Virus record (IMG/VR): IMGVR_UViG_3300044701_000569
Location: 186,001-250,000 of that record
Direction: 5' to 3' (one strand)
Length of the DNA: 64,000 nucleotides
Shown here: positions 1,656 to 48,856 of the stretch, piece after piece
Position numbering within the stretch: position 1 is the first letter of the stretch
Layout: each line of letters starts with the position of its first letter
Translations under genes and position numbers: made by a program
The notes under the pieces: model-generated
What the model saw: only the letters and a program-made list of their open reading frames with translations
Told to the model about the DNA's origin: nothing
Database searches by the model: none

Positions 1656-2526
1656 TCAGCGGAATGTCTGCTGCACAAGTACACCAATTTCTATCACAAA
1701 TTATTTCTGATGCTGGAATACGAAAATCTCCTTTATAGATATTTCCTAAACTACCGCCAACCCTGCAAGTAGCTCGGTGTACTTCACCATCCCAGTTAAT
1801 CATTAGACTTTCAATACCTGCACTGCATTTCCAATCTTTAAATTTATTCATATGCAGTTTTATTATATCATTAGCATGATATAGATCTTTGTTGTCAACT
1901 ATGCAATTTTCTTTTGCTGTTGCGTTGTTTTCTAATAGATATTTTAAGTCATTAGGTTGATATCTCATGTCGTCGAACCAATCGTGATCACCTTCGGTCC
2001 ACCGTATTCTTCTTAGTACAAATCCTATGTTGTGACCTGTAAACAGATCAACTGAATACCGCACTCTATCCATGTGTTGATGATGAGCCATAATATTAAC
2101 TTGAAACGGTATTTCACACAACTGAGAAAACAACAGTATAGTCATAGCACACCGTTCCCAATGTTCATTATCGTAGTGTAAACTAAACACATAATGACTT
2201 ACAGGTTGTTTAGCGTACCATTCAGGTGTTCTAGTAGCGTTAGTAGTTACATTGATCCAACTAGCATGTTCTTTAGCATACGCTAACAATTCTTCAATAT
2301 CCGGATGAACACACGGTTCACCACCAGTAAAGCTGATTCTAATTGGCTTATTAATTTCCGTTAATTTGTCTACAGTATTCTTTAAAATAGCTATATCTGT
2401 GTGCGGGCTTATGTTGTCATGAATTTCAGCAGGACAATATCCGCAATCAAAGTTACAACGTTTACCAAGATTCCACTCAATCTTTACAGACTCTTGATGA
2501 GGCCAACGACTAGTTATCTTATACAT
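1636..2526 (-). CDS. Radical SAM protein with SPASM/twitch-like domain (paralog of 657-1655)
   Basis: CNFDCGYC, FTGGEP, TTNA, and C-terminal CDRNWCTC. Confidence 0.9.
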   Translation of the reverse strand: MYKITSRWPHQESVKIEWNLGKRCNFDCGYCPAEIHDNISPHTDIAILKNTVDKLTEINKPIRISFTGGEPCVHPDIEELLAYAKEHASWINVTTNATRTPEWYAKQPVSHYVFSLHYDNEHWERCAMTILLFSQLCEIPFQVNIMAHHQHMDRVRYSVDLFTGHNIGFVLRRIRWTEGDHDWFDDMRYQPNDLKYLLENNATAKENCIVDNKDLYHANDIIKLHMNKFKDWKCSAGIESLMINWDGEVHRATCRVGGSLGNIYKGDFRIPASEIICDRNWCTCAADIPLTKTSIL

Positions 2527-3784
2527 AATTTATAAACTCTGGGTTGGTTGTAAGAAAGTTTTGATTTCTAGTTTTATCTAGTTGCCGATTAAATTCAACA
2601 CAGTCAGGCCAAAATCTACTTAAATCGTTAGCCTTAAGGAAATTAATATTATCTTGTATTTGTTGTAGTGTTACAGTTTTAAGAAGAGCATGTTTTTGCA
2701 CTAACGGATAGTCTAGTATTTTTGTTTTCATAACTTCTAACTTTTCTATTACTTGTTCTTTTAATACACTTGGCAATGTCTGAGCAGATAGTGCTCTAGG
2801 ATAGTTTACACGATGTGAATAAAACACAATACCCATTTCATTTATAAAGTAGTCTATAACTTTATCTATCTGCATTATGTTATTAGCCTGTACAGTAAAT
2901 GCTCCTACTACTCGGCTTACGTTAGGAAATGACTTAAACACTTTAACATTTTCTTCTATTTCGGAAAACTTACCATTACCTCTTATGTATTCATAAACAT
3001 CATGTATACCATCAATACTTACATTTACAGCTATTGATTTAAACTTCGGCCAATAATCATGTATAGTTCTTCCTCCCTTAATTCCTAAGGTCGTACCATT
3101 AGTAGCATATTTTAATTCAATATTAGAACCATAAGGTGCAAGCATATCTAATATTTTATAATGATAAGGATCCATTAGAGGTTCGCCGCCAGCAAATTCT
3201 ACCCTACGAAAGTACGGTAATAACTTTTCAAAACTATTCCACCAGTTATCGCTATTGTCAAAGGGTCCTATATACTGACCAGGTACATCAACTAATTTTT
3301 CAATAGTAGGTATAAGATAATTGTTTTCTTTTTTATAAAATTCTGTAACTTGGTCCCAATCTTTCCAACTAGTACTATCTAGAGGATTGCACATACGGCA
3401 TTTTAAATTGCAAAGATTGTTTAATTTAATTTCCATTGTAGGAAATTCAAAAGGCATTGAAAAATCTTCTAACAGATTTTCTAATGCATTGGGATAAAGA
3501 TTAATTCTAGCTTCTGGAATAACTCCATTAATGTGTCTTTGTCTTAAACTTTCAACGCCCTGATCTTCTAAATCAAAACAGGGTTTACATACTTCTGGTC
3601 TTTCATTATTTAGAACCTGTTGGCGAACTTTGCGCATTTCACTGTTGTTCCACGCTTCTTCTAAACTTTCTTTTTGAATCCACCCTATAGGTTGACTACG
3701 ACAACAGACTTTTATTGCTCCGTCTTCTCTAGTAGCAAGTCCTGTAAAAGGATGCATACAGAAGGTACATGATTTATTTTCCAA
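2519..3784 (-). CDS. Twitch-domain radical SAM protein
   Basis: N-terminal CMHPF..CC..W....M...R.......CKPC auxiliary-cluster domain, then CNLKCRMC, AGGEP, TNG. Probable TTG start at 3784, overlapping the upstream stop (the ORF track starts at 3850). Confidence 0.88.
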   Translation of the reverse strand: MENKSCTFCMHPFTGLATREDGAIKVCCRSQPIGWIQKESLEEAWNNSEMRKVRQQVLNNERPEVCKPCFDLEDQGVESLRQRHINGVIPEARINLYPNALENLLEDFSMPFEFPTMEIKLNNLCNLKCRMCNPLDSTSWKDWDQVTEFYKKENNYLIPTIEKLVDVPGQYIGPFDNSDNWWNSFEKLLPYFRRVEFAGGEPLMDPYHYKILDMLAPYGSNIELKYATNGTTLGIKGGRTIHDYWPKFKSIAVNVSIDGIHDVYEYIRGNGKFSEIEENVKVFKSFPNVSRVVGAFTVQANNIMQIDKVIDYFINEMGIVFYSHRVNYPRALSAQTLPSVLKEQVIEKLEVMKTKILDYPLVQKHALLKTVTLQQIQDNINFLKANDLSRFWPDCVEFNRQLDKTRNQNFLTTNPEFINYV

Positions 3785-4499
3785 GAGCCCACTCCCTTTC
3801 TTTACACCAGAAACATTTTCCGCAAACAGGAACATACTGTCCTGAAACATAAGTTTTATAATCTAAGTCACCAAAAGTTTCAGGATAGTTTATTTTATCG
3901 CCTTCACAGCTTCTAGTCAAGTTTAATAAGTCTGTTATGTTATTTTTAAAATACTGATTTATTATCCAATTTTTTCTTGTATGAATAAAGGGATGACATA
4001 CAGTAACTCCCATGTGTTGTATAATAGGATCTATATGACCCTCATCTCTGTCGTCTAGAGATCCGTCAATTTCAATATCGGGGTTAAGATTAACAGCAGC
4101 AAACCAAGCATCTAGTTGTTCTCTATGAGCAATATATTCGTTATGAGCTCTAAGAATTATTTGATTACCAGATTTTAATTTTCCGTATTCGTCAACAATA
4201 TTAGGACCAGTAGATCCCCACTCTAGTTCTGGAGGTATAAAACCTTCGTGCCTAAAAAAACGATTTTTAAATCTATTTTGAAGCCAATTATACACATCTA
4301 AACTGTTTTGTCTTTGCCAGGGTCTTGTTTTCCAACAACGAATCTGTGTAATGATATGAATATCTGCACTAGTGTTCATACATATTAAATAAGCTAATAA
4401 GGCACTATCTGCCCCACCGCTTAAACTTATTCCTATCCGTGACCAATTAGGATCAATAGGCAAGATTACGTCGTCATATTTAACAGAAGGAATATTCAT
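3774..4499 (-). CDS. QueC-like PP-loop ATP pyrophosphatase (adenine nucleotide alpha-hydrolase)
   Basis: SLSGGADS PP-loop, TRSCE, and CGKCFWC Zn motif. Start set at the ATG 5 nt downstream of TAAATA. Confidence 0.7.
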   Translation of the reverse strand: MNIPSVKYDDVILPIDPNWSRIGISLSGGADSALLAYLICMNTSADIHIITQIRCWKTRPWQRQNSLDVYNWLQNRFKNRFFRHEGFIPPELEWGSTGPNIVDEYGKLKSGNQIILRAHNEYIAHREQLDAWFAAVNLNPDIEIDGSLDDRDEGHIDPIIQHMGVTVCHPFIHTRKNWIINQYFKNNITDLLNLTRSCEGDKINYPETFGDLDYKTYVSGQYVPVCGKCFWCKEREWALGK

Positions 4500-13308: not shown

Positions 13309-13602
13309 TTATTTGTACTTCAAATGTGGACAAGCCAACATGAAATAGGACAGCTCTTTTGGTTCTTCAAATCCTATCCTTAGCGAATAATTTAATTTGT
13401 TATCGTAATCAATGATAGTACTTCGTCCAATATAATACTTGCTCTTTAGATTATATTCTATCCATTTTTCAAGAGCATCTTTCATGTTGTACGGAAGTAC
13501 AAGATCCGCATATTCAAAATGGATAGGAGGAACAGTAGTCCTCCTAATCCCAAACACCTCTAATGGATTAACTGTAAGTGCTTTACGCATTAGCCTCTTC
13601 AT
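13309..13602 (-). CDS. Hypothetical phage protein
   Basis: 97 aa ORF overlapping the upstream stop. Confidence 0.65.
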   Translation of the reverse strand: MKRLMRKALTVNPLEVFGIRRTTVPPIHFEYADLVLPYNMKDALEKWIEYNLKSKYYIGRSTIIDYDNKLNYSLRIGFEEPKELSYFMLACPHLKYK

Positions 13603-14854
13603 AATGTGCAGTTACACCAAATGGAGCCTGCAGATTCTTATCGTGATGTCCGTGTACGATAAAGATAGTATCGCAGTAGTTATCTTCACCCCAACTGTCA
13701 AATGGGTAACCATCTGTAAACATGATAAACTTTTTTGGTTGGATATTGTTATTGCGCATGTATGCCCAATTGGCCATAAAGTCAGTACCACCGCCACCTT
13801 TGATTTCATAGTCTAGTAGACTGTCACCACCATCAGCACTAAAGTCCTGTTCGTTATAGACCTTAGTGTCAAAGCACCACAGTTTAATATTGTAGTCTTT
13901 GTACTCGTCCATAATGCCTTTAATCTCGCCTAAGAAATCTTTTGCTTGATCATCACCAATTGATCCTGACATATCTAAGCTAATGCAGATATCAATCGTT
14001 TCGTCAAAGTTCATACCGGGCAGGATAGCACCAGTATGCCATCCTTTGCGACTTGGACGAGCAAAAGTGTAGTCATTACGGATAGTGCTTTGGATTTGCT
14101 GACGTAGCATCTGCCGCCAATTCATCTTTGGCTCAGTAAGCTCTTTGATCATCCGACGGATTTCACCGGGTACGTTGCCAGCGCCAGCACTCTGTGCCGC
14201 ACTGATCATACCTTCCTTAATCTCGTCACGAATCTTACGAAGCTCTTCCTTGCTGTACTTTGGACGCTTACCCTTGCCTTCTTTTGGATCACTGTCGCCG
14301 TCCTCGTCGTCACCTTCCCAGTCAATATGCTCGTCAAGAAGCTCACCTAGCTTTTCGAGCTCTTCCTTAGTCTTCTTAAACAAGTCGTCATATACTTCTT
14401 CAGAAGTCCAATCTTGGTACTTGAAGTCTTGATAGCAGTCTACTATCTTTGGCTTGTCACCAATTCGATCTCTTACAAGAAGATTGTTGACAATGTAGTC
14501 AGATGCAATGTTATGTAAGATTGGGTTACGATCTTCTCTACGACTAAGGTGATCAAAAACGCAGTGAAGAATTTCGTGTGCAATAACAAACTCAATTTCT
14601 TTATTGTTCATAGCGTTAAAGAATTGAGTGTTAAAGAATAGATTCCTGCCGTCTACAGCGGCAGTAGGCAACCATTCGTCGGCTGCTTGAATACGCAAAC
14701 GAGTTGCCATATTACCAAAAAACGGGTGACGCAACAGTAGTCCAATACGAGCAGTGATAATTCTATCAACTACTTCTTTGCGCATATACTCTAGCTTTTC
14801 TGGAGTAATGTTTGGATCTGGTTGCCAGTTCTTCTTTTTGCTAGCTACGGTCAT
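13583..14854 (-). CDS. Metallopeptidase-like (HExxH) plus VWA domain protein (DUF2201-like)
   Basis: TAAVDG, AHEILH, acidic linker, LDMSGS MIDAS, GGGTDF, FTDG. Confidence 0.85.
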   Translation of the reverse strand: MTVASKKKNWQPDPNITPEKLEYMRKEVVDRIITARIGLLLRHPFFGNMATRLRIQAADEWLPTAAVDGRNLFFNTQFFNAMNNKEIEFVIAHEILHCVFDHLSRREDRNPILHNIASDYIVNNLLVRDRIGDKPKIVDCYQDFKYQDWTSEEVYDDLFKKTKEELEKLGELLDEHIDWEGDDEDGDSDPKEGKGKRPKYSKEELRKIRDEIKEGMISAAQSAGAGNVPGEIRRMIKELTEPKMNWRQMLRQQIQSTIRNDYTFARPSRKGWHTGAILPGMNFDETIDICISLDMSGSIGDDQAKDFLGEIKGIMDEYKDYNIKLWCFDTKVYNEQDFSADGGDSLLDYEIKGGGGTDFMANWAYMRNNNIQPKKFIMFTDGYPFDSWGEDNYCDTIFIVHGHHDKNLQAPFGVTAHYEEANA

Positions 14855-41128: not shown

Positions 41129-41819
41129 ACTTATATTTATCAATATCGCCCTTGTAGACTATTTTGTCTACTTTGCGTATTGCATGACCTATAAGCATCT
41201 CAACTAGCGACATAACACGGTCGTCACGTACATAAATGTAACTTCCGTTCGCAAATCCATTACCAATATCTTTAAGTGTTTTAGGACCTACTTTTACTTT
41301 GTCAGTGTTAGATTTTAACCAATTGTAAGCATTAGCATCAAGCCTCTTGTAGGATAAGTGTACTTGATATTGATAAGAACTGGGATAATTTACAATTATT
41401 AAGTTTTCTTTGCGCGAAAGAAGATCAACTGCTTCCGGGCTTGGTTCCCAAAACTCCTTAACACTTACACGCATTTTATTAGAAATTTTCATTAAAAGAC
41501 TTCTATTGCTACTGTATATGTTAAGTGTATTAGATTCGCATCTTACTTTATAGTCACTGGCTTTTTTTAAGATATTGTAAATATCCTTAGCATCAAAAAA
41601 TGCGTCCTCAGTTATTTCTACTGTAGATCTATATGTGGTCTTAGTTAAGGGTTCACCTGCTTTATGCTGTGCTGTTAGAGTATCTAATCTAACTTTAGCA
41701 TGAGCTAACTTTTTATCAGAATTTGAATCTGATCTAAAAATTGTAGCCAGCGGATTGGAAAGTACCAGTTTGTACAGGTACTTTCCGTGATGCAGTTTTT
41801 TAGTTTCAAACAGTCTCAT
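41118..41819 (-). CDS. Hypothetical protein
   Basis: About 233 aa ORF downstream of clpA; start 41819 or 41831. Confidence 0.65.
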   Translation of the reverse strand: MRLFETKKLHHGKYLYKLVLSNPLATIFRSDSNSDKKLAHAKVRLDTLTAQHKAGEPLTKTTYRSTVEITEDAFFDAKDIYNILKKASDYKVRCESNTLNIYSSNRSLLMKISNKMRVSVKEFWEPSPEAVDLLSRKENLIIVNYPSSYQYQVHLSYKRLDANAYNWLKSNTDKVKVGPKTLKDIGNGFANGSYIYVRDDRVMSLVEMLIGHAIRKVDKIVYKGDIDKYKYDD

Positions 41820-44052
41820 TAGCTGCTTCATTTACTACACAGTCCAATTTGATTTCGTTTTCACGATAGTCAACAGTTACACTGCCCCCATTCTTTAAAT
41901 CACCAAACAGTATCTGTCTTGACAAGGGACGCTTAATCTCTTTGTCAATAACACGCTGTAGAGGTCTTGCACCCATCTTAGGGTCAAATCCCTTATCTAC
42001 TAGATAGTCTAATGCTTCGTCAGTAATTGAGATAGCAATGTTCTTTTCCTTGACCATTTGCTTGAGTTCTAACAGGAACTTGCCTACAATCTTCATCATA
42101 GTTTCCTTGCTCAACTTAGCAAACGTAATTACACCGTCTAGTCTGTTGCGGAATTCAGGTGCAAAGAATTTCTTAAGCTCACTGTCATTGTAGTTGCCTT
42201 CAATTGAATCATTAAATCCAATCTTGTTCTTTTCAGCTTCCTTAGCGCCTAGGTTAGTGGTAAGGATTAGGATACAGTTTCTACCATCAGCTTCCTTGCC
42301 ATTTGAACCTGTTACTTTACCGTTATCCATCAACTGTAGTAGGATTTGGCTAACATCAGGGTGTGCCTTTTCAATTTCATCCAGCAGTAATACACAGTTT
42401 GGATTTTCCTGTAGCTTGGTAATCAGCAAGCCTGCATTTTCTTCAAAACCAACATAACCAGGAGGTGAACCAATCAACTTGCTAACAGCATGCTTCTCTT
42501 GATATTCACTCATATCAAATCTTACTAGCTTGACACCGAGATGTTTAGATAGCTGTTTGGCTGTTTCGGTCTTACCTGTACCTGTTGGACCCATAAACAC
42601 AAATGCACCTACGGGCTTGTCATCTGCTTTTAGACCAGCTTGGCTAACAAGTATCTTGTCAACAATGCTTTCAATAGCATCATCCTGTCCATATACACCC
42701 TGCTTGAGGTTGTTTTCTAGGTTCACAAGATTTTCTGTTTCTCTTTCTGCTACTTGTTCAGCAGGAAGATTAACAATCTTAGCCAGTTCGTATTGAATTT
42801 CAGCAGCGCCTACAACCTTATTGTCCTTTTGATTCTTGAGCTTGAATCTTGAACAAGCAACGTCAATGAGGTCAATAGCCTTGTCCGGCAGCTTCTTATC
42901 ACTCTGATACTTCACACTGAGTTTGACTGCTGCTTCAATTGCAGCGTCAGTAATTTCTGTCTTGTGATAGTCTTCATAATACTTCTTAATACCTTGTAGG
43001 ATATCTTTAGTAGTTTCTGGAGAAGGCTCATCTACAGTTACTCTCTGGAATCTGCGCATCAGCGCACGATCCTTTTCAAAGTACTTGCGGTATTCTTCCC
43101 AAGTAGTACTTGCTACTACCTTCAAGTCGCCTTTGGTAAGAGCTGGCTTGAGCATGTTAGCGAGATCATTAGCACCACCGCTGCCACCAGCACCAGCACC
43201 ACTCATCATGTGTGCTTCGTCGATGAACATGATAGTCTTACCCTGCTTAGTTAGAGCCTGTAGCACTAACTTGAAGCGTTCTTCAAAGTCGCCTCGATAC
43301 TTAGATCCTGCCAGCATTGAACCAATGTCTAGTACATAAACACTGTAGTCCTGCAGAAACTCCGGTACGTCCTTGTTTACAATCTTATATGCAAGTCCTT
43401 CTGCAATGGCAGTTTTACCTACACCGGGATCACCGACCATTAGCACATTGTTCTTTGAACGACGTCCTAGTGCTAGTGCAATAGAATCTAATTCTTCACT
43501 ACGACCAATAATAGGATCAATCTTGTTACGCTTTACTTCGTCATTTAGATTAGTAGTAAACGCTCTCAATGCCCTTCGAGCTTCGCTGCTGATAGAATTA
43601 TCCTCTTCAACTTCCTCTTCAACTTCGTTATTAAGAAATTCAGCAAACTTGTCTTTTACAATGTTAGCCTCATTAAGATAATATACAGCTATGCTACGTT
43701 TTTCAGTTAGCATGCTAAGAAGTACGTCGGATAAATTAATATGATTTCGACCATTAAACAATGTTTGCGTAAATGCTCTATTAAGCACACGCTCAACTGC
43801 TTGTGTTTTCTTAGGCTTAAACTTTTCTAGCTCTGTCTTTAAGTCATCACAATTAGTCTTTAAATGATGCTCTAAATTTGTTTTGATAAAGTTAACGTCA
43901 CTGCCATACATGGACAATACATTGACAAAATTTTCCTCACAGAGCATAGCATAGAGAAGATGCTCTAGAGTAACATATTCATGCTTTAACTTCTGAGCAT
44001 CTTTAACTGCTTTATCAAATACTAATGTTAACTCTTCTGATGGTTCGACCAT
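41806..44052 (-). CDS. clpA: ATP-dependent Clp protease ATPase subunit, ClpA-like
   Basis: N-domain HEYVTLEHLL; two AAA modules (GDPGVGKT, GPTGTGKT); GSPPGYVG; IGF loop; no ClpB middle coil. Confidence 0.92.
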   Translation of the reverse strand: MVEPSEELTLVFDKAVKDAQKLKHEYVTLEHLLYAMLCEENFVNVLSMYGSDVNFIKTNLEHHLKTNCDDLKTELEKFKPKKTQAVERVLNRAFTQTLFNGRNHINLSDVLLSMLTEKRSIAVYYLNEANIVKDKFAEFLNNEVEEEVEEDNSISSEARRALRAFTTNLNDEVKRNKIDPIIGRSEELDSIALALGRRSKNNVLMVGDPGVGKTAIAEGLAYKIVNKDVPEFLQDYSVYVLDIGSMLAGSKYRGDFEERFKLVLQALTKQGKTIMFIDEAHMMSGAGAGGSGGANDLANMLKPALTKGDLKVVASTTWEEYRKYFEKDRALMRRFQRVTVDEPSPETTKDILQGIKKYYEDYHKTEITDAAIEAAVKLSVKYQSDKKLPDKAIDLIDVACSRFKLKNQKDNKVVGAAEIQYELAKIVNLPAEQVAERETENLVNLENNLKQGVYGQDDAIESIVDKILVSQAGLKADDKPVGAFVFMGPTGTGKTETAKQLSKHLGVKLVRFDMSEYQEKHAVSKLIGSPPGYVGFEENAGLLITKLQENPNCVLLLDEIEKAHPDVSQILLQLMDNGKVTGSNGKEADGRNCILILTTNLGAKEAEKNKIGFNDSIEGNYNDSELKKFFAPEFRNRLDGVITFAKLSKETMMKIVGKFLLELKQMVKEKNIAISITDEALDYLVDKGFDPKMGARPLQRVIDKEIKRPLSRQILFGDLKNGGSVTVDYRENEIKLDCVVNEAANETV

Positions 44053-44053
44053 A

Positions 44054-44881
44054 TTAATCGTTTTCCTTTTTTATACTTTTATTTAAGTCCTGCAACTTTT
44101 GATACACTTCTGGATCTGACATATCAGGCATTATCGGATCAATTTTTACAAATACTTTACCTTTTTTTCTAGTATGCAAATCTGGAATACCATAATCTGC
44201 TATACTAAAAGTTGTGCCTGGTTTGGTGCCTTTAGGTATTGTTAGTTGAACTGTTCTTTCATCTAACGTTGTCACTAGTATAACACAACCTAACAAAATG
44301 TCAAACAAAAATACTTGTTGAGATGTGTACAAATCATTGCCATCTCTCCGCCATCCATCTATATCAAAAACTTGTATTTTAATAAAAAGATCACCGCGTT
44401 GAAATCTAGGATCTCCGTCATCACCTAGTCCAGTATAGCGCACTGTGTCACCGTTTCTTGCACCTGGTGGAATATCAACTTCTACAGTTTCTTGTTTTCC
44501 AGAACGAAGTCTATAAGATACTATTAGTTGTTTTCCAAGTATAACATCTTTTAAATCAATTCTAGCGAGAACTGTGAGGTCTCTGTTTTTAGGAGCGCCT
44601 CGACCCATACCAAATTGTGAAAATATATCTCCAAAAGGACTGCCATTCCCAAAAGGATTTTGATTAGCCCAGCCAGGATTTTGCCATTGTGTTTGCGGAT
44701 TATCGTAGTTAGCTTTTTTATCAGGATCGCCTAGTGTGTCATATGCTTCATTTATTTTAGCAAATGTATTGTGATCCCCGCCGCGGTCGGGATGATGCTG
44801 CATCGCTAGTTTGCGATATGCTCTTTTTATTTCTTCTGGCGAAGCTGTTCGTGAGACGCCCAGCGTACTGTAGTGATCCAT
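44054..44881 (-). CDS. DnaJ-class chaperone without zinc finger (CbpA-like)
   Basis: J-domain with HPD, G/F-rich linker, C-terminal DnaJ domain. Confidence 0.92.
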   Translation of the reverse strand: MDHYSTLGVSRTASPEEIKRAYRKLAMQHHPDRGGDHNTFAKINEAYDTLGDPDKKANYDNPQTQWQNPGWANQNPFGNGSPFGDIFSQFGMGRGAPKNRDLTVLARIDLKDVILGKQLIVSYRLRSGKQETVEVDIPPGARNGDTVRYTGLGDDGDPRFQRGDLFIKIQVFDIDGWRRDGNDLYTSQQVFLFDILLGCVILVTTLDERTVQLTIPKGTKPGTTFSIADYGIPDLHTRKKGKVFVKIDPIMPDMSDPEVYQKLQDLNKSIKKEND

Positions 44882-44928
44882 GCTAATACTTAGCTGACCT
44901 GTACGCTGGGCGTGGTGTTAGTGAAAGA

Positions 44929-45405
44929 TTAGTTTCTACCTTCTACTTTTTCTTTAGTACGACCGTATGCAGCAATACCAAGTACAGCACCCATAGCAAT
45001 GTGATATAGGCCTGCGCCCTGAAGCGTTAGCGGTTGCCATTGGCTTGTTACTTGCCCGCCTTGTACTGCCTGTAATAGGCTCCAAAGGATTGGGAATATA
45101 ACAAAGTCAAATGTACAAGTTCCCATGTACAACCAACCCATAGCTGGACGCCATTTCTTGTTGATCCAATCTTCGTTTGTGTTCTTAACTAGGACGTCCG
45201 CGTCCCCTACATTATTACTCATATCTGCCCTCGCTGCTGGCGGGGTATTTCTAAATCCACTGACAGAGTCACTGTCCCCCCTACGTGTTGTAATTACAGT
45301 TTCTTCATACTTAGGTGCTGAAGCTGCTGCTGAAAAACTTGATGATGTTGAACTAGAACCAAAACTGTTAGCAGGTTCTAGATCTTCTGGCTTTAATCTA
45401 GGCAT
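44929..45405 (-). CDS. Putative holin (3TM / GTA-holin-like)
   Basis: KWRPAMGW followed by TM segments, LGIAAYGRTKEK; TAAATA and AAGGAGG upstream. Confidence 0.65.
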   Translation of the reverse strand: MPRLKPEDLEPANSFGSSSTSSSFSAAASAPKYEETVITTRRGDSDSVSGFRNTPPAARADMSNNVGDADVLVKNTNEDWINKKWRPAMGWLYMGTCTFDFVIFPILWSLLQAVQGGQVTSQWQPLTLQGAGLYHIAMGAVLGIAAYGRTKEKVEGRN

Positions 45406-45436
45406 GTTCCCTCCTTAATTACCCTTGCGCAAGTAT

Positions 45437-46141
45437 TTAGCGCAATTTGGCTAATTTAAATGCTCTGAAAATGCAGAACCACATCCATCCTATATCAAAT
45501 TCAAACCAACGACGGCTAAGTTTAGGGTTTGCAGGATCTAAATGATGATTATTATGAAGTTCTTCACCGCCTATTATAATGCCCCAAGGACTTACGTTAC
45601 GACTATGATCCTTAGTGTTACCATTGCGATAACCCCACCAGTGTCCTATACCATTAATAAAGCCTGCTGCCCAGAATGGAATCCATATCATCTGTACACC
45701 CCATACTAGAAAACCCCATAGCCCAAATAATAACAGATCTATAATTAGCATTAAAAAAATGCCTAGTCGATGATGCGGAGTATATAATTTTCTTTCAATC
45801 CAATCTTTTGGAGTACCAACACCATATCTAAGTACAAACTGCGGATCTTTGGTAGCTTCGTGATAAAGACTCCAACCGCCAAATAATAATTTCCAAATGC
45901 CAAATACATGAGGACTATGCGGATCACCGTTTATATCAGTGCTTTGATGATGTTTACGATGTACAGCCACCCATGCTTTAGTAGTCATACCTGTTGTAAG
46001 CCATAGCCAAAAGCGCATGAAATGCTCAACAATTGGATGAAATATAATTAATTTATGTGCTTGGCTACGGTGCAGATAAAGGGTAACACATATAATAGTA
46101 ATATGTGTCATAATAAGGGTCGCGAGTAATAAAGTTATCAT
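45437..46141 (-). CDS. Acyl-lipid (delta-9-type) fatty acid desaturase
   Basis: His boxes HRSQAH, HRKHH, HNNHH; TM segments. Confidence 0.92.
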   Translation of the reverse strand: MITLLLATLIMTHITIICVTLYLHRSQAHKLIIFHPIVEHFMRFWLWLTTGMTTKAWVAVHRKHHQSTDINGDPHSPHVFGIWKLLFGGWSLYHEATKDPQFVLRYGVGTPKDWIERKLYTPHHRLGIFLMLIIDLLLFGLWGFLVWGVQMIWIPFWAAGFINGIGHWWGYRNGNTKDHSRNVSPWGIIIGGEELHNNHHLDPANPKLSRRWFEFDIGWMWFCIFRAFKLAKLR

Positions 46142-46151
46142 CTAGTATTTA

Positions 46152-46254
46152 GTGCTCACTTCTTAAAACTTAGGGTAGCGAATCCGGTTTTAAAGGCAGC
46201 AGCCGCCTAACGCCTTAGGCTCAGATAACTGAGTAACGGTCCCAAGGTGTGTTC
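46152..46254 (-). ncRNA. Candidate structured non-coding RNA (unidentified)
   Basis: GC-rich intergenic stretch of about 100 nt with several nested inverted repeats; strand uncertain. Confidence 0.4.
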
Positions 46255-46485
46255 TTAAATCATTTTAGTGAGTGCGTAAACTCCAGCTACTAGCAGAGCT
46301 TTAACTTCAATGTCATCTGCTTCGTCATCTAGTCTATCTGTGCGAACTAGGTCTTCTAACAGTTCTTTAAACTCGTCAGCACTTAGTTCATCGTTCTCAT
46401 ACTGAGCTGCTAGATCTAGTGCTATCTGAGCTCTTTCAGCAGCCCAGGGTCTATCGCAGTTTGCTAGTTCTCTCAACGCTTTCAT
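46255..46485 (-). CDS. Hypothetical protein
   Basis: 76 aa ORF. Confidence 0.65.
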   Translation of the reverse strand: MKALRELANCDRPWAAERAQIALDLAAQYENDELSADEFKELLEDLVRTDRLDDEADDIEVKALLVAGVYALTKMI

Positions 46486-46488
46486 GAT

Positions 46489-46539
46489 TTATCTCTTGTG
46501 ATTGCCGCCGCAAATTGGGCATTCTTCTACTGTGTTCAT
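46489..46539 (-). CDS. 16-aa micro-ORF MNTVEECPICGGNHKR
   Basis: AAGGA SD; ATGA overlap with the upstream ORF; fills the gap. Confidence 0.4.
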   Translation of the reverse strand: MNTVEECPICGGNHKR

Positions 46540-46658
46540 AATGTATCCTTTTTAAACATTGTCATAAATCTTGCTTGTATATTTTTAGCGAATTGTGGTT
46601 GAGGAAAATTCCAACCTACAAATGCCCCTATTGCTAACCAAAATAATGTTTCTAACAT
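46536..46658 (-). CDS. Small membrane protein (40 aa, not in ORF track)
   Basis: MLETLFWLAIGAFVGWNFPQPQFAK...; AGGAG upstream. Confidence 0.65.
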   Translation of the reverse strand: MLETLFWLAIGAFVGWNFPQPQFAKNIQARFMTMFKKDTL

Positions 46659-46679
46659 AATACCCTCTCCTTTGTAATA

Positions 46680-47243
46680 TTACATGAATAAGAATAGGCC
46701 CTGAGCACTTAACAGTAACCCAACACCTGCTACAGCAAAGCTGGCCCAGAACATTGGCATACTAACTGCAAGAATACTTGCAGAAAGAACTACAATAGCT
46801 AACTGATATGCTGTACTTGCGTAGCCAATCCACGGACTAGATTTTTTAGCAATCTCACGTTCTGCTTCCATCTTACGTGCATTGATAGAGATTTCTTTCT
46901 TGTCAGATTCCATACGCTCTGCTTCTGCACGGAATTCTTTCTTCAATGCAGGGTCGTTGGTTGTCTTACTAGCAATTTCAAAACTGACTAGACGATTATT
47001 CTTTGCTTGATATTGTGCCCATGCATTGTTAGCACCCAGTGTATTGTTAAGAACTGTAGAACTTAACTTACCACCATACCATGCATTTACTGCAAGGAAT
47101 AGTGCAAACACAGATATAACCATACCTGCTTTGTCTTTGATTTTTGCTTCGCGCTCAGAACGAGATCCGGGAGCCGGCTTTGGAGCATCCGGATCTTTAG
47201 GTTCTTTATTGATTAATTTTAAAATAGAGTCTTGTATAGCCAT
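46680..47243 (-). CDS. Membrane protein, DUF4337-like
   Basis: TM segment, WAQYQAK, coiled coil, then QLAIVVLSASIL and two TM segments. Confidence 0.65.
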   Translation of the reverse strand: MAIQDSILKLINKEPKDPDAPKPAPGSRSEREAKIKDKAGMVISVFALFLAVNAWYGGKLSSTVLNNTLGANNAWAQYQAKNNRLVSFEIASKTTNDPALKKEFRAEAERMESDKKEISINARKMEAEREIAKKSSPWIGYASTAYQLAIVVLSASILAVSMPMFWASFAVAGVGLLLSAQGLFLFM

Positions 47244-47252
47244 CTTCCCTCC

Positions 47253-47645
47253 TTAGAATCTTGATAGAACTGCGGCAGCTGCCTTTTCTGCTTGTGCTGA
47301 CATTATCTTTTTCTTGGCTTCGCAATATGCAGGAGAACCCTCTTTCTCTACACTGCGCTTATAAAAATCGTCTACAGTTTCACGCATAGGCTTTATTAGT
47401 GTTCTTACGTCAGTCTGTCTTAAACCTTTGCTTTCACTGTACATATCAAACCATTCTAGGTTGTCTGATATTTTCTTAACCTGTGCTGCATGTGGCTGTT
47501 TGCAATCCAGCTGTGCTACACTCTGTCTTACGTCTATAATACGTGCAGATTGATTAGAATCACTAAAGCTGGGGATCTTGCTGGTTAAGCTAGCACACCC
47601 TGAAAGTGTTACAGCTAGTGCAACTGTTGCAAGTAGTTTTATCAT
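47253..47645 (-). CDS. Lipoprotein
   Basis: MIKLLATVALAVTLSG-C lipobox; start corrected to 47645. Confidence 0.75.
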   Translation of the reverse strand: MIKLLATVALAVTLSGCASLTSKIPSFSDSNQSARIIDVRQSVAQLDCKQPHAAQVKKISDNLEWFDMYSESKGLRQTDVRTLIKPMRETVDDFYKRSVEKEGSPAYCEAKKKIMSAQAEKAAAAVLSRF

Positions 47646-47646
47646 A

Positions 47647-48042
47647 TTAGTTTTCCTTACAGGAACATTTTGTTTCGTAGTCGTGTATAGCTGCTTTAAT
47701 TGCATCTTCTGCAAGAATTGAGCAGTGTATTTTAACTGGCGGTAGAGCTAGTTCTTCTGCAATTTCTGAATTTTTAATTTCTTTAGCTTGTTGGAGTGTT
47801 CTTCCTTTGACCCACTCTGTGACAAGGCTCGAGCTCGCGATAGCCGATCCGCAGCCATACGTTTTAAATTTTGCATCTGTAATAATACCTGTATCATTAT
47901 CAACCTTTATTTGTAATTTCATTACATCGCCGCAAGCAGGTGCGCCAACCATACCAGTACCAATGGAAGCATCACTAGTAGAAAAACTACCCACGTTTCT
48001 GGGGTTTTCATAATGATCAAGAACTTTATCAGAATATGCCAT
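47647..48042 (-). CDS. iscU: Fe-S cluster scaffold protein IscU
   Basis: MAYSDKVLDHYENPRNVGS, APACGDVM, TYGCGSAIASSS, LPPVKIHCS. Confidence 0.97.
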   Translation of the reverse strand: MAYSDKVLDHYENPRNVGSFSTSDASIGTGMVGAPACGDVMKLQIKVDNDTGIITDAKFKTYGCGSAIASSSLVTEWVKGRTLQQAKEIKNSEIAEELALPPVKIHCSILAEDAIKAAIHDYETKCSCKEN

Positions 48043-48045
48043 AAT

Positions 48046-48453
48046 TTATTTTTTATCTATCTTAACAGCTTCGTTTAGTTTTGAATCAGCTTCTTTATAA
48101 TATCTTTCATACGCTGCAATAATTGCCTGTTGCTGTTGAACATAGGCTCTAATGTCTGAAAGATTTAATCCTAGATCTGCATAGCCTTTGTCAGTTAGAC
48201 CAAATACAGCAATAGGTCTTCCTGACTTAGACAACTCGTCAAAAACTTCTTTATAGTTATCTTTAGTAATAACTACCCATTCGATGTTTCTCATACGAAC
48301 TCGATCAGCTTTGGGTAATTCTAATTTAGGTTTCTCAACTGGAGTAGTTGAGATTTGAATCTCTCTTGGCTTGGGAGTTAGTAAAGCGCAACCACTAACG
48401 CTTAACGAGATTATCAAAAAGCCAAGGACACTCGCTATTGAACGAACGGCCAT
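48046..48453 (-). CDS. Outer-membrane spanin (o-spanin) lipoprotein
   Basis: VSG-C lipobox; Pro-rich; overlaps the 3' end of the i-spanin. Confidence 0.7.
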   Translation of the reverse strand: MAVRSIASVLGFLIISLSVSGCALLTPKPREIQISTTPVEKPKLELPKADRVRMRNIEWVVITKDNYKEVFDELSKSGRPIAVFGLTDKGYADLGLNLSDIRAYVQQQQAIIAAYERYYKEADSKLNEAVKIDKK

Positions 48454-48856
48454 CTTTTGCCTCCTTCTCTGTCTTAGTTAGTTCTGCACCTGACAACAGC
48501 TCAAAGCATCTACCTGCTTTAGCACTGGCCGCATTGACTACACGTTGTATAGCTTCTGGTTTTGCGGCAGCAGTTTGTCCTAGGTCATGACGCTCTAGTT
48601 TCTCAGCAAGAACTTGATTCTGTGCTCTAATTCTACTAAACTCTTCATTAGTCTGCTTAATTTCAGTTGTTACACGAGCAAAGTCTTTTTTCATAGTATC
48701 GATCGTTTGCTCGTTTAATTTAACAGCAGTGTCTAACTTTGCATTGTTCTCAGTCAGGATTCGTATTCTGTCCTGACTGTCTTTATAATACCAGTAGCCA
48801 GCACCACCTAAGACGAGCATGACTACTAGCATTATACCTGCAAGTTTAAATCCCAT
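48395..48856 (-). CDS. Inner-membrane spanin (i-spanin)
   Basis: N-terminal TM plus long coiled coil, directly after the endolysin. Confidence 0.7.
   Translation of the reverse strand: MGFKLAGIMLVVMLVLGGAGYWYYKDSQDRIRILTENNAKLDTAVKLNEQTIDTMKKDFARVTTEIKQTNEEFSRIRAQNQVLAEKLERHDLGQTAAAKPEAIQRVVNAASAKAGRCFELLSGAELTKTEKEAKDGRSFNSECPWLFDNLVKR

What the first reader, a model, noticed from the sequence alone, without database searches (positions are those of the whole stretch)
46152..46254. Unidentified structured RNA between lysis-region genes
Seen (minus strand): stem ACACCTTGGG/CCTAAGGCGT enclosing CTCAG-TTAT-CTGAG; hairpin GGC-GGCTGCT-GCC; stem AAAAC/GTTTT enclosing GG-ATTCGCTA-CC; and a 3' tail AAGTGAGCA that can pair with both loops (TCGCT:AGTGA and TGCT:AGCA). 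It is GC-rich, non-coding and about 100 nt long in a genome with minimal spacers. Inference: a pseudoknotted ncRNA (ribozyme, riboswitch-like or packaging-related).
Basis: partly seen in the sequence, partly recalled or inferred. Interest (0 to 1): 0.6.

Follow-up and report, generated by a model that had tools for sequence, protein, structure and literature searches.

The report
Phage RNA with anti-23S-rRNA loops
The spacer holds one copy of a roughly 100-base pseudoknotted non-coding RNA that is conserved in hundreds of uncultured giant phages, matches no Rfam family, and shows two near-invariant hairpin loops that together are antisense to 18 highly conserved bases of bacterial 23S ribosomal RNA, which suggests a new way for a phage to act on ribosomes.

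Summary
A single-sequence fold is no better than shuffles (z -0.18), but comparison settles it. The element recurs in at least 190 distinct versions in IMG/VR phage contigs. It occurs once in this 357.6-kb phage genome and 1-2 times in five other 200-525 kb phage genomes. Covariation is strong: 91.5% of cells paired against 65.8% when shuffled.

The architecture is three hairpins (P1, P2, P3) plus a 3' tail. The proposed pairing of the tail with the P3 loop is not supported.

No Rfam 15 family, tRNA or terminator matches. It is not a 5' leader riboswitch: the flanking genes are unrelated, and promoter-like motifs often lie between it and the next gene.

New finding: loop L1 (CCUUAGGACC, 89-100% conserved) and loop L3 (UUCGCUACC) are complementary to adjacent stretches of 23S rRNA. 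The target is about C1920-A1937, running from the 3' strand of helix 69 into helix 70, and was checked on a real 23S sequence.

My best guess (about 0.4) is a trans-acting phage RNA that pairs with host 23S rRNA. Expression and binding are untested.

The parts
46151..46254 (-). Whole RNA element: the covariance-model match, about 104 nt.
   Evidence: 71.4 bits, E 1.5e-14, full model 1-96; the only copy in the 357,559-bp genome.
46255..46485 (-). Upstream 76-aa ORF. Its TAA stop (46255-46257) lies 4 nt before P1. The conserved A-rich 'AAGAAC' 5' flank overlaps the stop codon.
   Evidence: Homologues lie upstream of the element in L053 and L059, with extra genes in between.
46241..46250 (-). P1, 5' strand (ACACCTTGGG).
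   Evidence: P1 covaries across the family (CUCG/CGAG, CACG/CGUG, UUUGG/CCGAA).
46237..46247 (-). L1 motif CCTTGGGACCG. The family consensus is CCUUAGGACCG; the window copy has A to G, which still allows a G-U with U1926. It is antisense to 23S rRNA at about 1920-1930. In this copy it is partly paired inside P1.
46220..46233 (-). P1a inner hairpin CTCAG-TTAT-CTGAG. It is variable and dispensable; the shortest relatives such as L139 lack it.
46210..46219 (-). P1, 3' strand (CCTAAGGCGT). Its CCUAAGG is identical to 23S C1924-G1930, so it forms an internal 'pseudo-target' for L1.
46194..46208 (-). P2 hairpin AGGC/GCCT with the 7-nt loop GGCTGCT (L2, 46198-46204). Loop nt 2-4 (46201-46203) form the pseudoknot.
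   Evidence: pairs GC:59/CG:34 and CG:55/GC:39.
46165..46191 (-). P3 hairpin: outer stem AAAAC/GTTTT and inner stem GG/CC, with loop L3 ATTCGCTAC (46175-46183). L3 is antisense to 23S at about 1929-1937.
   Evidence: P3 pairs changed on both sides in 38-50 of 94 distinct sequences.
46153..46164 (-). 3' tail AAGAAGTGAGCA. AGC (46154-46156) pairs with L2. AAGUG is conserved and has no identified partner.
46145..46152 (-). CTAAATAC, a near match to the T4-late-promoter-like motif [AT]TAAATA. It lies directly after the RNA and 3 nt before the next start codon.
   Evidence: The motif is 23-fold enriched downstream of the element family-wide (43 of 156 against a 1.2% background). Its function as a promoter is inferred.
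45437..46141 (-). Downstream gene: fatty-acid-desaturase-like, 234 aa.
   Evidence: PF00487, E 5.6e-14.

Best explanation
This is one copy of a previously undescribed family of phage-encoded, roughly 80-105-nt structured non-coding RNAs.

Shown:
- Three hairpins (P1, P2, P3) are held together by a pseudoknot between the P2 loop and the 3' tail.
- The stems vary freely by compensatory change. Two hairpin loops and the tail are almost invariant.
- The RNA is read from the gene strand. It starts at or within a few bases of the upstream stop codon.
- It is usually single-copy per giant-phage genome.
- The two loops, L1 (CCUUAGGACC[G]) and L3 (UUCGCUACC), are the exact reverse complements of two abutting stretches of bacterial 23S rRNA. 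Together they cover about C1920-A1937, from the 3' strand of helix 69 through the linker into the 5' strand of helix 70.

Inferred:
- The pseudoknotted P2 scaffold holds P1 and P3 side by side so that the two loops bind this 18-nt rRNA stretch cooperatively in trans. The loop order matches the way the EBS2/EBS1 loops of a group II intron read a contiguous exon sequence.
- The likely targets are nascent 23S rRNA or free 50S subunits, where this subunit-interface region is not locked into the 70S ribosome.
- The consequence would be either modulation of 50S maturation or subunit joining, or masking of this region from a host factor.
- Which of these applies, and whether the RNA is cut out of the upstream transcript as a discrete small RNA, is not known.
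For: Family and structure:
- At least 190 distinct copies.
- The covariance model hits 99 of 99 loci.
- Covariation far exceeds both the shuffled and the slid controls.
- G-U cells number 56 against 18 A-C cells, which fixes the transcribed strand as the gene strand.
- The pseudoknot covaries across subfamilies.
- Copy number is 1 in the own genome and 1, 2, 1(+2 weak), 1, 1 in five other 200-525 kb phage genomes.

rRNA link:
- The target string CGGTCCTAAGGTAGCGAA was found in genomes of the family of the Haliscomenobacter MAG. There it lies inside Rfam LSU_rRNA_bacteria matches of 2326-2397 bits.
- L1 matches 11 nt and L3 matches 9 nt at adjacent, 2-nt-overlapping positions. None of 1000 shuffles of either loop gives so long a complement in that part of 23S.
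- In 104 copies not selected on L1, the ten core L1 bases are 89-100% conserved. The commonest change, A to G opposite U, is wobble-compatible.
- Over 194 copies the footprint of complements of 7 nt or more on 23S has sharp edges at 1920 and 1937. The L1-site complement is 11-15 nt in 174 of 194 copies. In many variants L1 is extended by CUA, exactly as 23S would require.
- No such target exists in the phage's own genome.

Context:
- The phage invests heavily in translation: 27 tRNAs, a tmRNA and ribosomal protein bS21.
- The element is not a leader. Neighbours are unrelated and a late-promoter-like motif follows it.
Against: - No expression data. The one metatranscriptome holding this phage has low-depth contigs on both flanking genes but none over the element. 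This is uninformative, but it is not support.
- In mature 70S ribosomes C1920-C1924 is paired within helix 69 (from my own knowledge of the 23S secondary structure), so pairing would need nascent or free 50S rRNA.
- A 9-11-nt hairpin loop cannot pair along its whole length without strain or opening of the stem.
- In the window copy and in 'type B' relatives, L1 is partly sequestered in P1 by an internal CCUAAGG.
- About 20% of copies replace L3 with other loops (GGAGUCGUGCCC, UACGCCAG, AACGCCAUU). Their complementarity to 23S is only 6-8 nt and is not significant.
- Because the target does not vary among the genomes examined, there can be no covariation between the RNA and its target, so the evidence is conservation plus complementarity only.
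- The conserved AAGUG of the tail and the L2 loop are unexplained by this model.
- The element is absent from the five nearest cultured jumbo phages, so no experimental system is at hand.
Confidence: 0.4

Rival explanations
1. It is a cis-acting element of the upstream mRNA's 3' end. It could be a folded cap that stabilises or terminates the transcript, or a processing site. It could also tether a just-released ribosomal subunit through the rRNA-complementary loops, so that translation restarts on the closely following gene. That would be analogous to the calicivirus TURBS or to plant-virus 3' translation enhancers that pair with rRNA.
For: - The element begins 0-5 nt after a stop codon in most copies, and an A-rich AAGAAC flank overlaps the stop.
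- Many downstream start codons lie only 8-14 nt after the tail with no obvious Shine-Dalgarno sequence.
- Some copies are followed by a U-run.
- It is co-oriented with both neighbours.
Against: - There is only one copy per 350-kb genome, whereas a general terminator or stabiliser should recur.
- The window copy has no terminator-like site, and most copies lack a U-run.
- Where a promoter-like motif or a 30-220-nt gap separates it from the next gene, restart coupling is implausible.
- Known restart tethers pair with small-subunit rRNA, not large-subunit rRNA (from my own knowledge).
- The upstream genes fall into more than 20 unrelated clusters.
Confidence: 0.2
2. It is a new class of small self-cleaving (or otherwise catalytic) RNA. 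The invariant loops and tail would form the active site, and the match to 23S rRNA would be incidental or historical.
For: - Its size, pseudoknot and roughly 35 near-invariant unpaired nucleotides amid freely covarying stems fit the pattern of small ribozymes.
- So do its phage habitat and its indifference to neighbouring genes. Twister, pistol and hatchet share this pattern (from my own knowledge).
- The conserved 5' edge abutting the upstream ORF would suit cleavage at the 5' end.
Against: - No Rfam ribozyme model matches at E up to 10 (window) or up to 1 (eight canonical copies).
- The fold is not the nested double pseudoknot of HDV-like ribozymes.
- L3 can be replaced by unrelated loops and P1a deleted, which is unusual for an active-site element.
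- An 18-nt bipartite complement to one rRNA site, extended in variants exactly as 23S dictates, is very improbable by chance.
Confidence: 0.15
3. It is a protein-binding RNA: a scaffold or decoy for a phage or host protein such as an RNA-modifying enzyme, a nuclease or a defence sensor. The loops would be protein recognition sites rather than base-pairing sites.
For: - It behaves like a single-copy gene.
- Its single-stranded motifs are invariant, and the conserved AAGUG and L2 have no RNA partner that I could identify.
Against: - No protein gene is consistently adjacent.
- A decoy for an rRNA-binding protein should mimic the rRNA sense strand, but the loops are antisense, and the strand is fixed by 56 G-U cells against 18 A-C cells.
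- This model does not explain why the two loops match adjacent rRNA stretches.
Confidence: 0.15
4. It is a riboswitch or other 5' leader that controls the downstream gene, here the desaturase-like gene.
For: - It lies directly upstream of an ORF, and the tail lies 12 nt from the ATG in the window.
- Several downstream genes in relatives are radical-SAM enzymes or SAH hydrolase.
Against: - About 40 unrelated downstream gene clusters, including a DNA polymerase, a lysozyme, a homing-endonuclease-like protein and small ORFs.
- A late-promoter-like motif lies between the RNA and the gene in 28% of copies, and TTGAC in 10%.
- The spacer to the next ORF ranges from 4 to more than 200 nt.
- There is no expression platform or terminator.
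- No Rfam riboswitch matches.
Confidence: 0.05

Closest known systems
Orphan structured RNA motifs of phages and metagenomes (Weinberg/Breaker-type candidates in Rfam; the >10,000 unnamed IMG/VR 'csRNAs' of PMC10690425)
   Same: It was found by comparative analysis. It shows covarying stems with conserved loops, a phage and metagenome habitat, and no known function.
   Different: No Rfam 15 model matches. I could not check whether it is among the unnamed csRNAs of PMC10690425, because no supplement is held. None of those is described as rRNA-complementary in that paper's text.
Group II intron exon-binding sites EBS2/EBS1
   Same: Two separate loops of one folded RNA read two adjacent stretches of a contiguous target. 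The 5' loop pairs with the 5' target stretch (from my own knowledge of group II introns). L1 and L3 have the same order relative to 23S.
   Different: It is about 100 nt, not 600 nt or more. It has no domain V/VI, no reverse transcriptase nearby, and loop complements of 9-15 nt rather than about 6 nt. This is an analogy in mode of action only, not membership.
Two-loop antisense small RNAs such as OxyS pairing with fhlA mRNA
   Same: A trans-acting bacterial RNA that binds its target through two hairpin loops (from my own knowledge).
   Different: The target here would be rRNA, not an mRNA. There is no Rho-independent terminator or Hfq-type 3' end. The RNA is phage-encoded.
Eukaryotic and archaeal snoRNAs that pair with pre-rRNA (U3, U8, guide snoRNAs)
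   Same: Small structured RNAs whose conserved single-stranded parts are antisense to conserved rRNA segments.
   Different: No C/D or H/ACA boxes are present. No such system is known in bacteria or phages. No partner protein has been identified.
Viral mRNA elements that pair with rRNA (calicivirus TURBS; plant-virus 3' translation enhancers)
   Same: A virus-encoded element close to a stop codon or in a 3' region, with conserved complementarity to host rRNA.
   Different: Those pair with small-subunit rRNA in eukaryotes. This one matches large-subunit rRNA, is a compact pseudoknotted domain, and is often separated from the next gene by a promoter-like motif.
Small self-cleaving ribozymes of phages (twister, pistol, hatchet, HDV-like)
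   Same: Size, pseudoknot, near-invariant unpaired nucleotides, phage habitat and variable gene context.
   Different: No model match and a different helix topology. Catalysis is untested.

Membership tests
Any Rfam 15 family | A covariance-model match at the family's gathering score | tested here: not met
   Whole window at the gathering threshold: 0 matches. Positions 45900-46500 at E up to 10: no match overlaps the element. Eight loci with canonical, type B and type C copies at E up to 1: 0 matches.
tRNA / tmRNA | Cloverleaf or tmRNA fold recognised by ARAGORN | tested here: not met
   No gene in the window. The genome's 27 tRNAs and its tmRNA lie elsewhere.
Small self-cleaving ribozymes (hammerhead, twister, twister-sister, pistol, hatchet, hairpin, HDV-like) | Match to the class's consensus core | tested here: not met
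   No Rfam ribozyme family among the matches at permissive E-values.
Small self-cleaving ribozymes (any, including a new class) | Site-specific self-cleavage | not testable with these tools
   This needs an in-vitro cleavage assay. The contig-based RNA data cannot show RNA ends.
Riboswitch / cis-regulatory 5' leader | Lies in the 5' UTR of functionally coherent genes | tested here: not met
   About 40 unrelated downstream clusters. A promoter-like motif lies between the element and the gene in 28% of copies.
Riboswitch / cis-regulatory 5' leader | Expression platform (terminator or sequestered ribosome-binding site) | tested here: not met
   No terminator-like site in 45800-46800. The spacing to the next start codon varies from 4 to more than 200 nt.
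Intrinsic terminator | GC-rich hairpin followed by a U-run; many copies per genome | tested here: not met
   None found by the scan. There is one copy per genome.
Repeated regulatory cassettes of T4-type phages (PeSL) or type III antitoxin repeat arrays | Multiple or tandem copies per genome | tested here: not met
   A single copy by blastn and by covariance model.
Trans-acting antisense RNA directed at rRNA (proposed here; no established family) | Conserved single-stranded complementarity to the target | tested here: met
   L1 matches 11-15 nt and L3 matches 9 nt of a verified 23S sequence, at abutting sites.
Trans-acting antisense RNA directed at rRNA (proposed here; no established family) | Expressed as an RNA and physically bound to the target | tested here: inconclusive
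   Expression: the metatranscriptome contigs cover the flanks but not the element, at a depth of 2-5. Binding is not testable with these tools.
Group II intron | Six-domain ribozyme with a catalytic domain V, usually with a reverse transcriptase ORF | tested here: not met
   The element is about 100 nt with three hairpins, and no group II Rfam match was found. Only the two-loop reading of a target is analogous.

The most novel reading that the evidence does not exclude
A giant phage makes a small pseudoknotted RNA that base-pairs through two loops with the helix 69/helix 70 region of the host's 23S rRNA. In this way it would control, protect or disable large ribosomal subunits. That would be the first natural rRNA-directed antisense RNA in the bacterial or phage world, functionally closer to a snoRNA or an anti-association factor than to any known phage RNA. 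A still bolder version, which I think much less likely, is that it guides cleavage, modification or repair at the junction of the two loop-binding sites, near G1929-U1931.
Probability: 0.3. Interest if true: 0.92.

Novelty: categorically new. Interest (0 to 1): 0.8.

Why it matters
Huge phages are known to carry tRNAs, tmRNAs and ribosomal proteins, and this genome has 27 tRNAs, a tmRNA and bS21. No phage RNA is known to address the ribosomal RNA itself.

This family is widespread, with strong covariation and a compact size suited to biochemistry and structure work. Its bipartite antisense match is to a highly conserved and functionally central part of the 50S subunit interface. Helix 69 takes part in subunit joining, decoding, termination and recycling.

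If the pairing is real, it opens a directly testable mechanism of ribosome takeover or protection. It would also provide a natural RNA scaffold for addressing rRNA. Because E. coli 23S, as I recall it, carries the same target sequence, the idea can be tested there without culturing the unknown host.

If the pairing is not real, the family is still a well-supported new orphan RNA class and a ribozyme candidate.

Tried and rejected
- Single-sequence folding of either strand gave insignificant z-scores (-0.18 and -0.62). It is not usable as evidence either way.
- Rfam at three levels and ARAGORN: nothing.
- blastn and tblastn against 50,697 deposited phage genomes: no relative of the spacer or the desaturase. 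The canonical element finds only a chance 22-nt match.
- The covariance model found nothing in the five nearest cultured jumbo phages by DNA polymerase: Atu_ph07, Phosso, Vibrio 2.275.O, XbC2 and 121Q.
- Bacterial genomes: a composite pattern scan of 185,579 species gave 6 hits. Five lack the stems and the 5' motif, so they are chance. The sixth (L215, binned as Haliscomenobacter) lies on a 183-kb contig where a T4-type DNA polymerase sits next to the element, so it is most likely a phage contig.
- I looked for a target of the loops in the phage's own genome: none beyond chance.
- I asked whether the alternative L3 loops also match 23S. They give 6-8 nt near helix 70, which is not significant, so I do not rely on it.
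When tiled, it returned unrealistically long duplexes. I abandoned it in favour of exact-complement counting.
- Metatranscriptome contigs had low depth and did not cover the element: uninformative.
- The RNA-repair-splint and RNase III-guide ideas: the phage encodes no RtcB, Rnl2-type ligase or RNase III by Pfam. These ideas therefore have no support, though host enzymes are not excluded.
- Mobile-element idea: within the closest subclade the element stays between homologues of the 76-aa gene and the desaturase while other genes come and go. Flanking gene turnover therefore explains the varied context at least there.
- Literature: five full-text searches, one paper read and one supplement look-up found no description of this RNA or of a phage RNA complementary to 23S rRNA.
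Full report
**1. What is in the window.** On the minus strand, a 113-nt spacer separates the TAA stop of a 76-aa ORF (46255-46485) from the ATG of a 234-aa fatty-acid-desaturase-like gene (45437-46141; PF00487). No ORF of 30 aa or more covers the spacer. Its GC is 0.49 in a region of about 0.40. The window is bases 186001-250000 of a 357,559-bp IMG/VR virus record. Its family-B DNA polymerase is most like those of the Atu_ph07 and 121Q group of T4-related jumbo phages, at about 43-46% identity.

**2. Chance or not.**
- Folding the single sequence says nothing: z = -0.18 on the minus strand and -0.62 on the plus strand.
- The comparative evidence is decisive. Loci fetched through the desaturase gene showed the same element at varying distances upstream, with different stems but the same loops.
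Together they gave 194 distinct copies.
- A covariance model built from 23 diverse copies found exactly one match in each of 99 sources.
- On that alignment, 91.5% of cells form standard pairs against 65.8% after shuffling (0 of 500 shuffles reach it).
- 344 cells carry changes on both sides against 105.
- The covariation score is 0.50 against 0.03-0.10 when the 3' partners are slid by 1-3 columns.
- G-U cells outnumber A-C cells 56 to 18, so the transcribed strand is the gene strand, which is the window's minus strand.

**3. Anatomy.**
- *5' flank.* An A-rich sequence ([U/A]AAGAAC) often contains the upstream stop codon.
- *P1.* A covarying stem (ACAC/GUGU, CUCG/CGAG, CACG/CGUG, UUUGG/CCGAA and others) encloses the motif L1, CCUUAGGACC(G). 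It may also hold a variable inner hairpin, P1a. The shortest copies are a plain hairpin with L1 as the loop.
- *P2.* A 4-5-bp stem carries the 7-nt loop GGCUGCU. Its pairs flip between GC and CG in about 40% of sequences.
- *P3.* An outer stem of 4-6 bp, an internal loop and a 2-4-bp inner stem carry the loop L3, AUUCGCUAC(C).
- *3' tail.* AAAGUGAGC(A).
- *The window copy* belongs to a diverged branch. Here L1 (with an A to G change) is largely paired within a longer P1, whose 3' strand contains CCUAAGG.

**4. Pseudoknot.** The tail pairs with the P2 loop.
- In the main type the register GCU:AGC is paired in 282 of 282 cells, with one double change (GGU:ACC in L130).
- Stronger support comes from subfamilies in which loop and tail are both replaced yet stay complementary: GCCGUU/AACGGC, GCCAUU/AAUGGC, GCUAC/GUAGC, GUCCC/GGGAC and GCCCC/GGGGC. 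L179 shows CCGUUGA/UCAACGG (read from the sequence printed).
Copies with the L3 variants GGAGUCGUGCCC, UACGCCAG or AACGCCAUU keep the same tail.

**5. Genomic behaviour.**
- There is one copy in this genome. Five other 200-525 kb phage genomes hold 1, 2, 1 (plus two weak matches), 1 and 1.
- The element starts 0-5 nt after a stop codon in most copies.
- Upstream genes fall into more than 20 unrelated clusters and downstream genes into about 40. The downstream genes include radical-SAM enzymes, SAH hydrolase, a lysozyme-like protein, a NUMOD3 protein, a DsbA-like regulator, the desaturase and a DNA polymerase.
- Within the closest subclade the element stays between homologues of the 76-aa gene and the desaturase while other genes are gained or lost around it.
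- Within 45 nt downstream, 28% of copies carry [AT]TAAATA, which matches the T4 late-promoter consensus as I know it, against a background of 1.2%. A further 10% carry TTGAC clustered 7-10 nt after the tail. The window has CTAAATAC directly after the tail.
- The element therefore sits at the end of the upstream transcription unit rather than in the leader of the next gene.
- No sigma-70-like promoter or intrinsic terminator is associated with the window copy.

**6. What it is not.**
- No Rfam 15 family matches, even at permissive thresholds and for canonical copies. It is not a tRNA or tmRNA.
- It is absent from deposited phage genomes by BLAST. The covariance model finds nothing in the five nearest cultured jumbo phages.
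- In 185,579 bacterial and archaeal species genomes, a composite pattern found only one true copy. That copy lies on a 183-kb contig binned with a Haliscomenobacter MAG and has a T4-type DNA polymerase next to it, so it is most likely a phage contig.
- Five full-text literature searches found no description. A catalogue of more than 10,000 unnamed IMG/VR structured-RNA candidates exists (PMC10690425), but its alignments could not be checked.

**7. The rRNA complementarity.** L1 and L3 looked to me like the reverse complement of the 23S rRNA sequence around the I-CeuI homing site. That was a recollection, so I tested it.
- The 18-mer CGGTCCTAAGGTAGCGAA was found in genomes of the family of the Haliscomenobacter MAG. 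It lies inside Rfam LSU_rRNA_bacteria matches of 2326-2397 bits.
- I assigned E. coli numbering from memory of helix 69 as 1906-1924, so it is approximate. On that numbering L1 is antisense to C1920-G1930 and L3 (UUCGCUACC) to G1929-A1937. These are two abutting sites with a 2-nt overlap.
- A 9-mer match somewhere in 23S is expected by chance for a 100-nt RNA. An 11-mer is not, at roughly 0.06 per RNA by my own arithmetic from the two lengths.
- None of 1000 shuffles of either loop gave so long a complement in that part of 23S.
- In 104 distinct copies that were not selected on L1, the ten core L1 bases are 89-100% conserved. The commonest substitution (A to G opposite U1923, 10 copies) preserves wobble pairing.
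- Over 194 copies the footprint of complements of 7 nt or more on 23S rises sharply at 1920 and falls sharply after 1937. The L1-site complement is 11-15 nt in 174 copies. Many variants extend L1 on its 5' side by CUA, exactly as 23S U1931-G1933 would require.
- The P1a hairpin of many copies also resembles the antisense of helix 69 itself, giving coverage of 1909-1919 in 10-15% of copies.
- The phage genome holds no such target.
- The loop order is 5' loop to 5' target stretch. This is the order used by the EBS2/EBS1 loops of group II introns, not that of a simple antisense copy.

**8. Most likely mechanism, and its weak points.** I propose that P2 and its pseudoknot form a rigid scaffold that presents L1 and L3 side by side for cooperative pairing with this stretch of host 23S rRNA.
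- *Shown:* conservation, structure, strand, copy number and complementarity.
- *Inferred:* that the RNA is released or acts in trans, that it binds rRNA, and what follows from binding.
- *Where it could bind:* in 70S ribosomes C1920-C1924 is paired within helix 69, so the plausible targets are nascent 23S or free 50S subunits, where this interface region is exposed.
- *Possible outcomes:* interference with 50S maturation or subunit joining, or masking of the region from a host nuclease or modifying enzyme. Nucleases are known to cut nearby; MazF-mt6, for example, cuts at U1940/C1941 (from my own knowledge).
- *Fit with the genome:* the phage's investment in translation, with 27 tRNAs, a tmRNA and bS21, suits a ribosome-directed RNA. 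It encodes no RtcB, Rnl2-type ligase or RNase III, so I do not favour repair-splint or RNase III-guide versions.
- *Against:* there is no expression evidence. Hairpin loops are strained when fully paired. L1 is partly sequestered in the window copy and in type B. L3 is replaced in about 20% of copies, without significant rRNA complementarity. Covariation with the target is impossible to observe because the target does not vary among the genomes examined.
- I put this model at about 0.4. The rivals are a cis-acting 3'-end or re-initiation element (0.2), a new self-cleaving ribozyme (0.15), a protein-binding RNA (0.15) and a riboswitch or leader (0.05).

**9. Verdict.** The interpretation as a pseudoknotted ncRNA is supported, while the riboswitch and packaging readings are not. 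The element is a member of a large RNA family specific to uncultured phages and, as far as I can tell, undescribed. Its most conserved loops point at the large-subunit rRNA. Transcript-end mapping and a simple binding assay would decide between the models.

Noticed in passing
Own genome outside the window: G000:C1 16545-16863, 282490-292363, 335163-335596, 332212-332364: The phage carries 27 tRNA genes (one with a 4-base anticodon call), a permuted tmRNA with the tag VAVNDNNFALAA, and a ribosomal protein bS21 gene. This is a large translation-related gene set.
   Followed up: partly
window 41806-48453 (minus strand): A run of host-like auxiliary genes surrounds the element: a ClpB-like AAA+ chaperone (748 aa), a DnaJ (275 aa), a 3-TM holin-like protein, the fatty-acid desaturase, DUF4337, a NifU/IscU Fe-S scaffold and an Rz-like spanin. 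The 'lysis region' label fits only the holin and the spanin.
   Followed up: partly
window 46145-46152, and downstream of the element in many loci (e.g. L216, L222, L255, L283): The motif (G)ATAAATAC lies only 3-10 nt before many start codons. If it is a T4-type late promoter, these late mRNAs would be leaderless or nearly so.
   Followed up: partly
L082, L119, L153, L172, L184, L189 (type B); L092, L105, L146, L156 (type C); L307, L325, L360, L365, L373: These are divergent subfamilies of the same RNA with a replaced pseudoknot and/or L3. In type B the P2 loop (GCCGUUAU) is itself antisense to 23S at about 1916-1922, and the tail (AACGGC) and the P1 3' strand (CUAAGGU) resemble the 23S sense strand. 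In the L307 group a GGCGU upstream of P2 can pair with the L3 variant ACGCC.
   Followed up: partly
L207/L203 in G002 (524,565-bp phage); L208, L209 in G003: One 525-kb phage genome has two strong copies of the RNA, 405 kb apart. Another genome has two additional weak matches (E 0.1-0.5) that may be degenerate or divergent copies.
   Followed up: no
L215 (NZ_JBBAKG010000001.1, 183-kb contig of a Haliscomenobacter sp. MAG): The region fetched from this contig looks like phage: a T4-type DNA polymerase lies next to the RNA. The contig is either a mis-binned phage genome or a weak hint at a Saprospiraceae (Bacteroidota) host. In this copy the upstream ORF appears to run about 20 nt into the element.
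   Followed up: partly
window 47253-47714 and 47647-48042; 48046-48453 and 48395-48856 (minus strand): Neighbouring ORFs overlap by 60-70 nt, including the one upstream of the NifU-like gene. Either the start codons are mis-assigned or the overlaps are real.
   Followed up: no
window 47775-48076: DNA and RNA runs show a sharp pile-up of partly matching contigs from other organisms over the NifU/IscU-like gene, with depth up to 227 in one lake metagenome. This fits a highly conserved host-like gene attracting cross-mapping.
   Followed up: no
window 13583-14854 and 2519-3850 (minus strand): An HNH endonuclease (phrog_1314) and a radical-SAM protein are encoded in the window. Radical-SAM genes also recur next to the RNA in relatives.
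   Followed up: no
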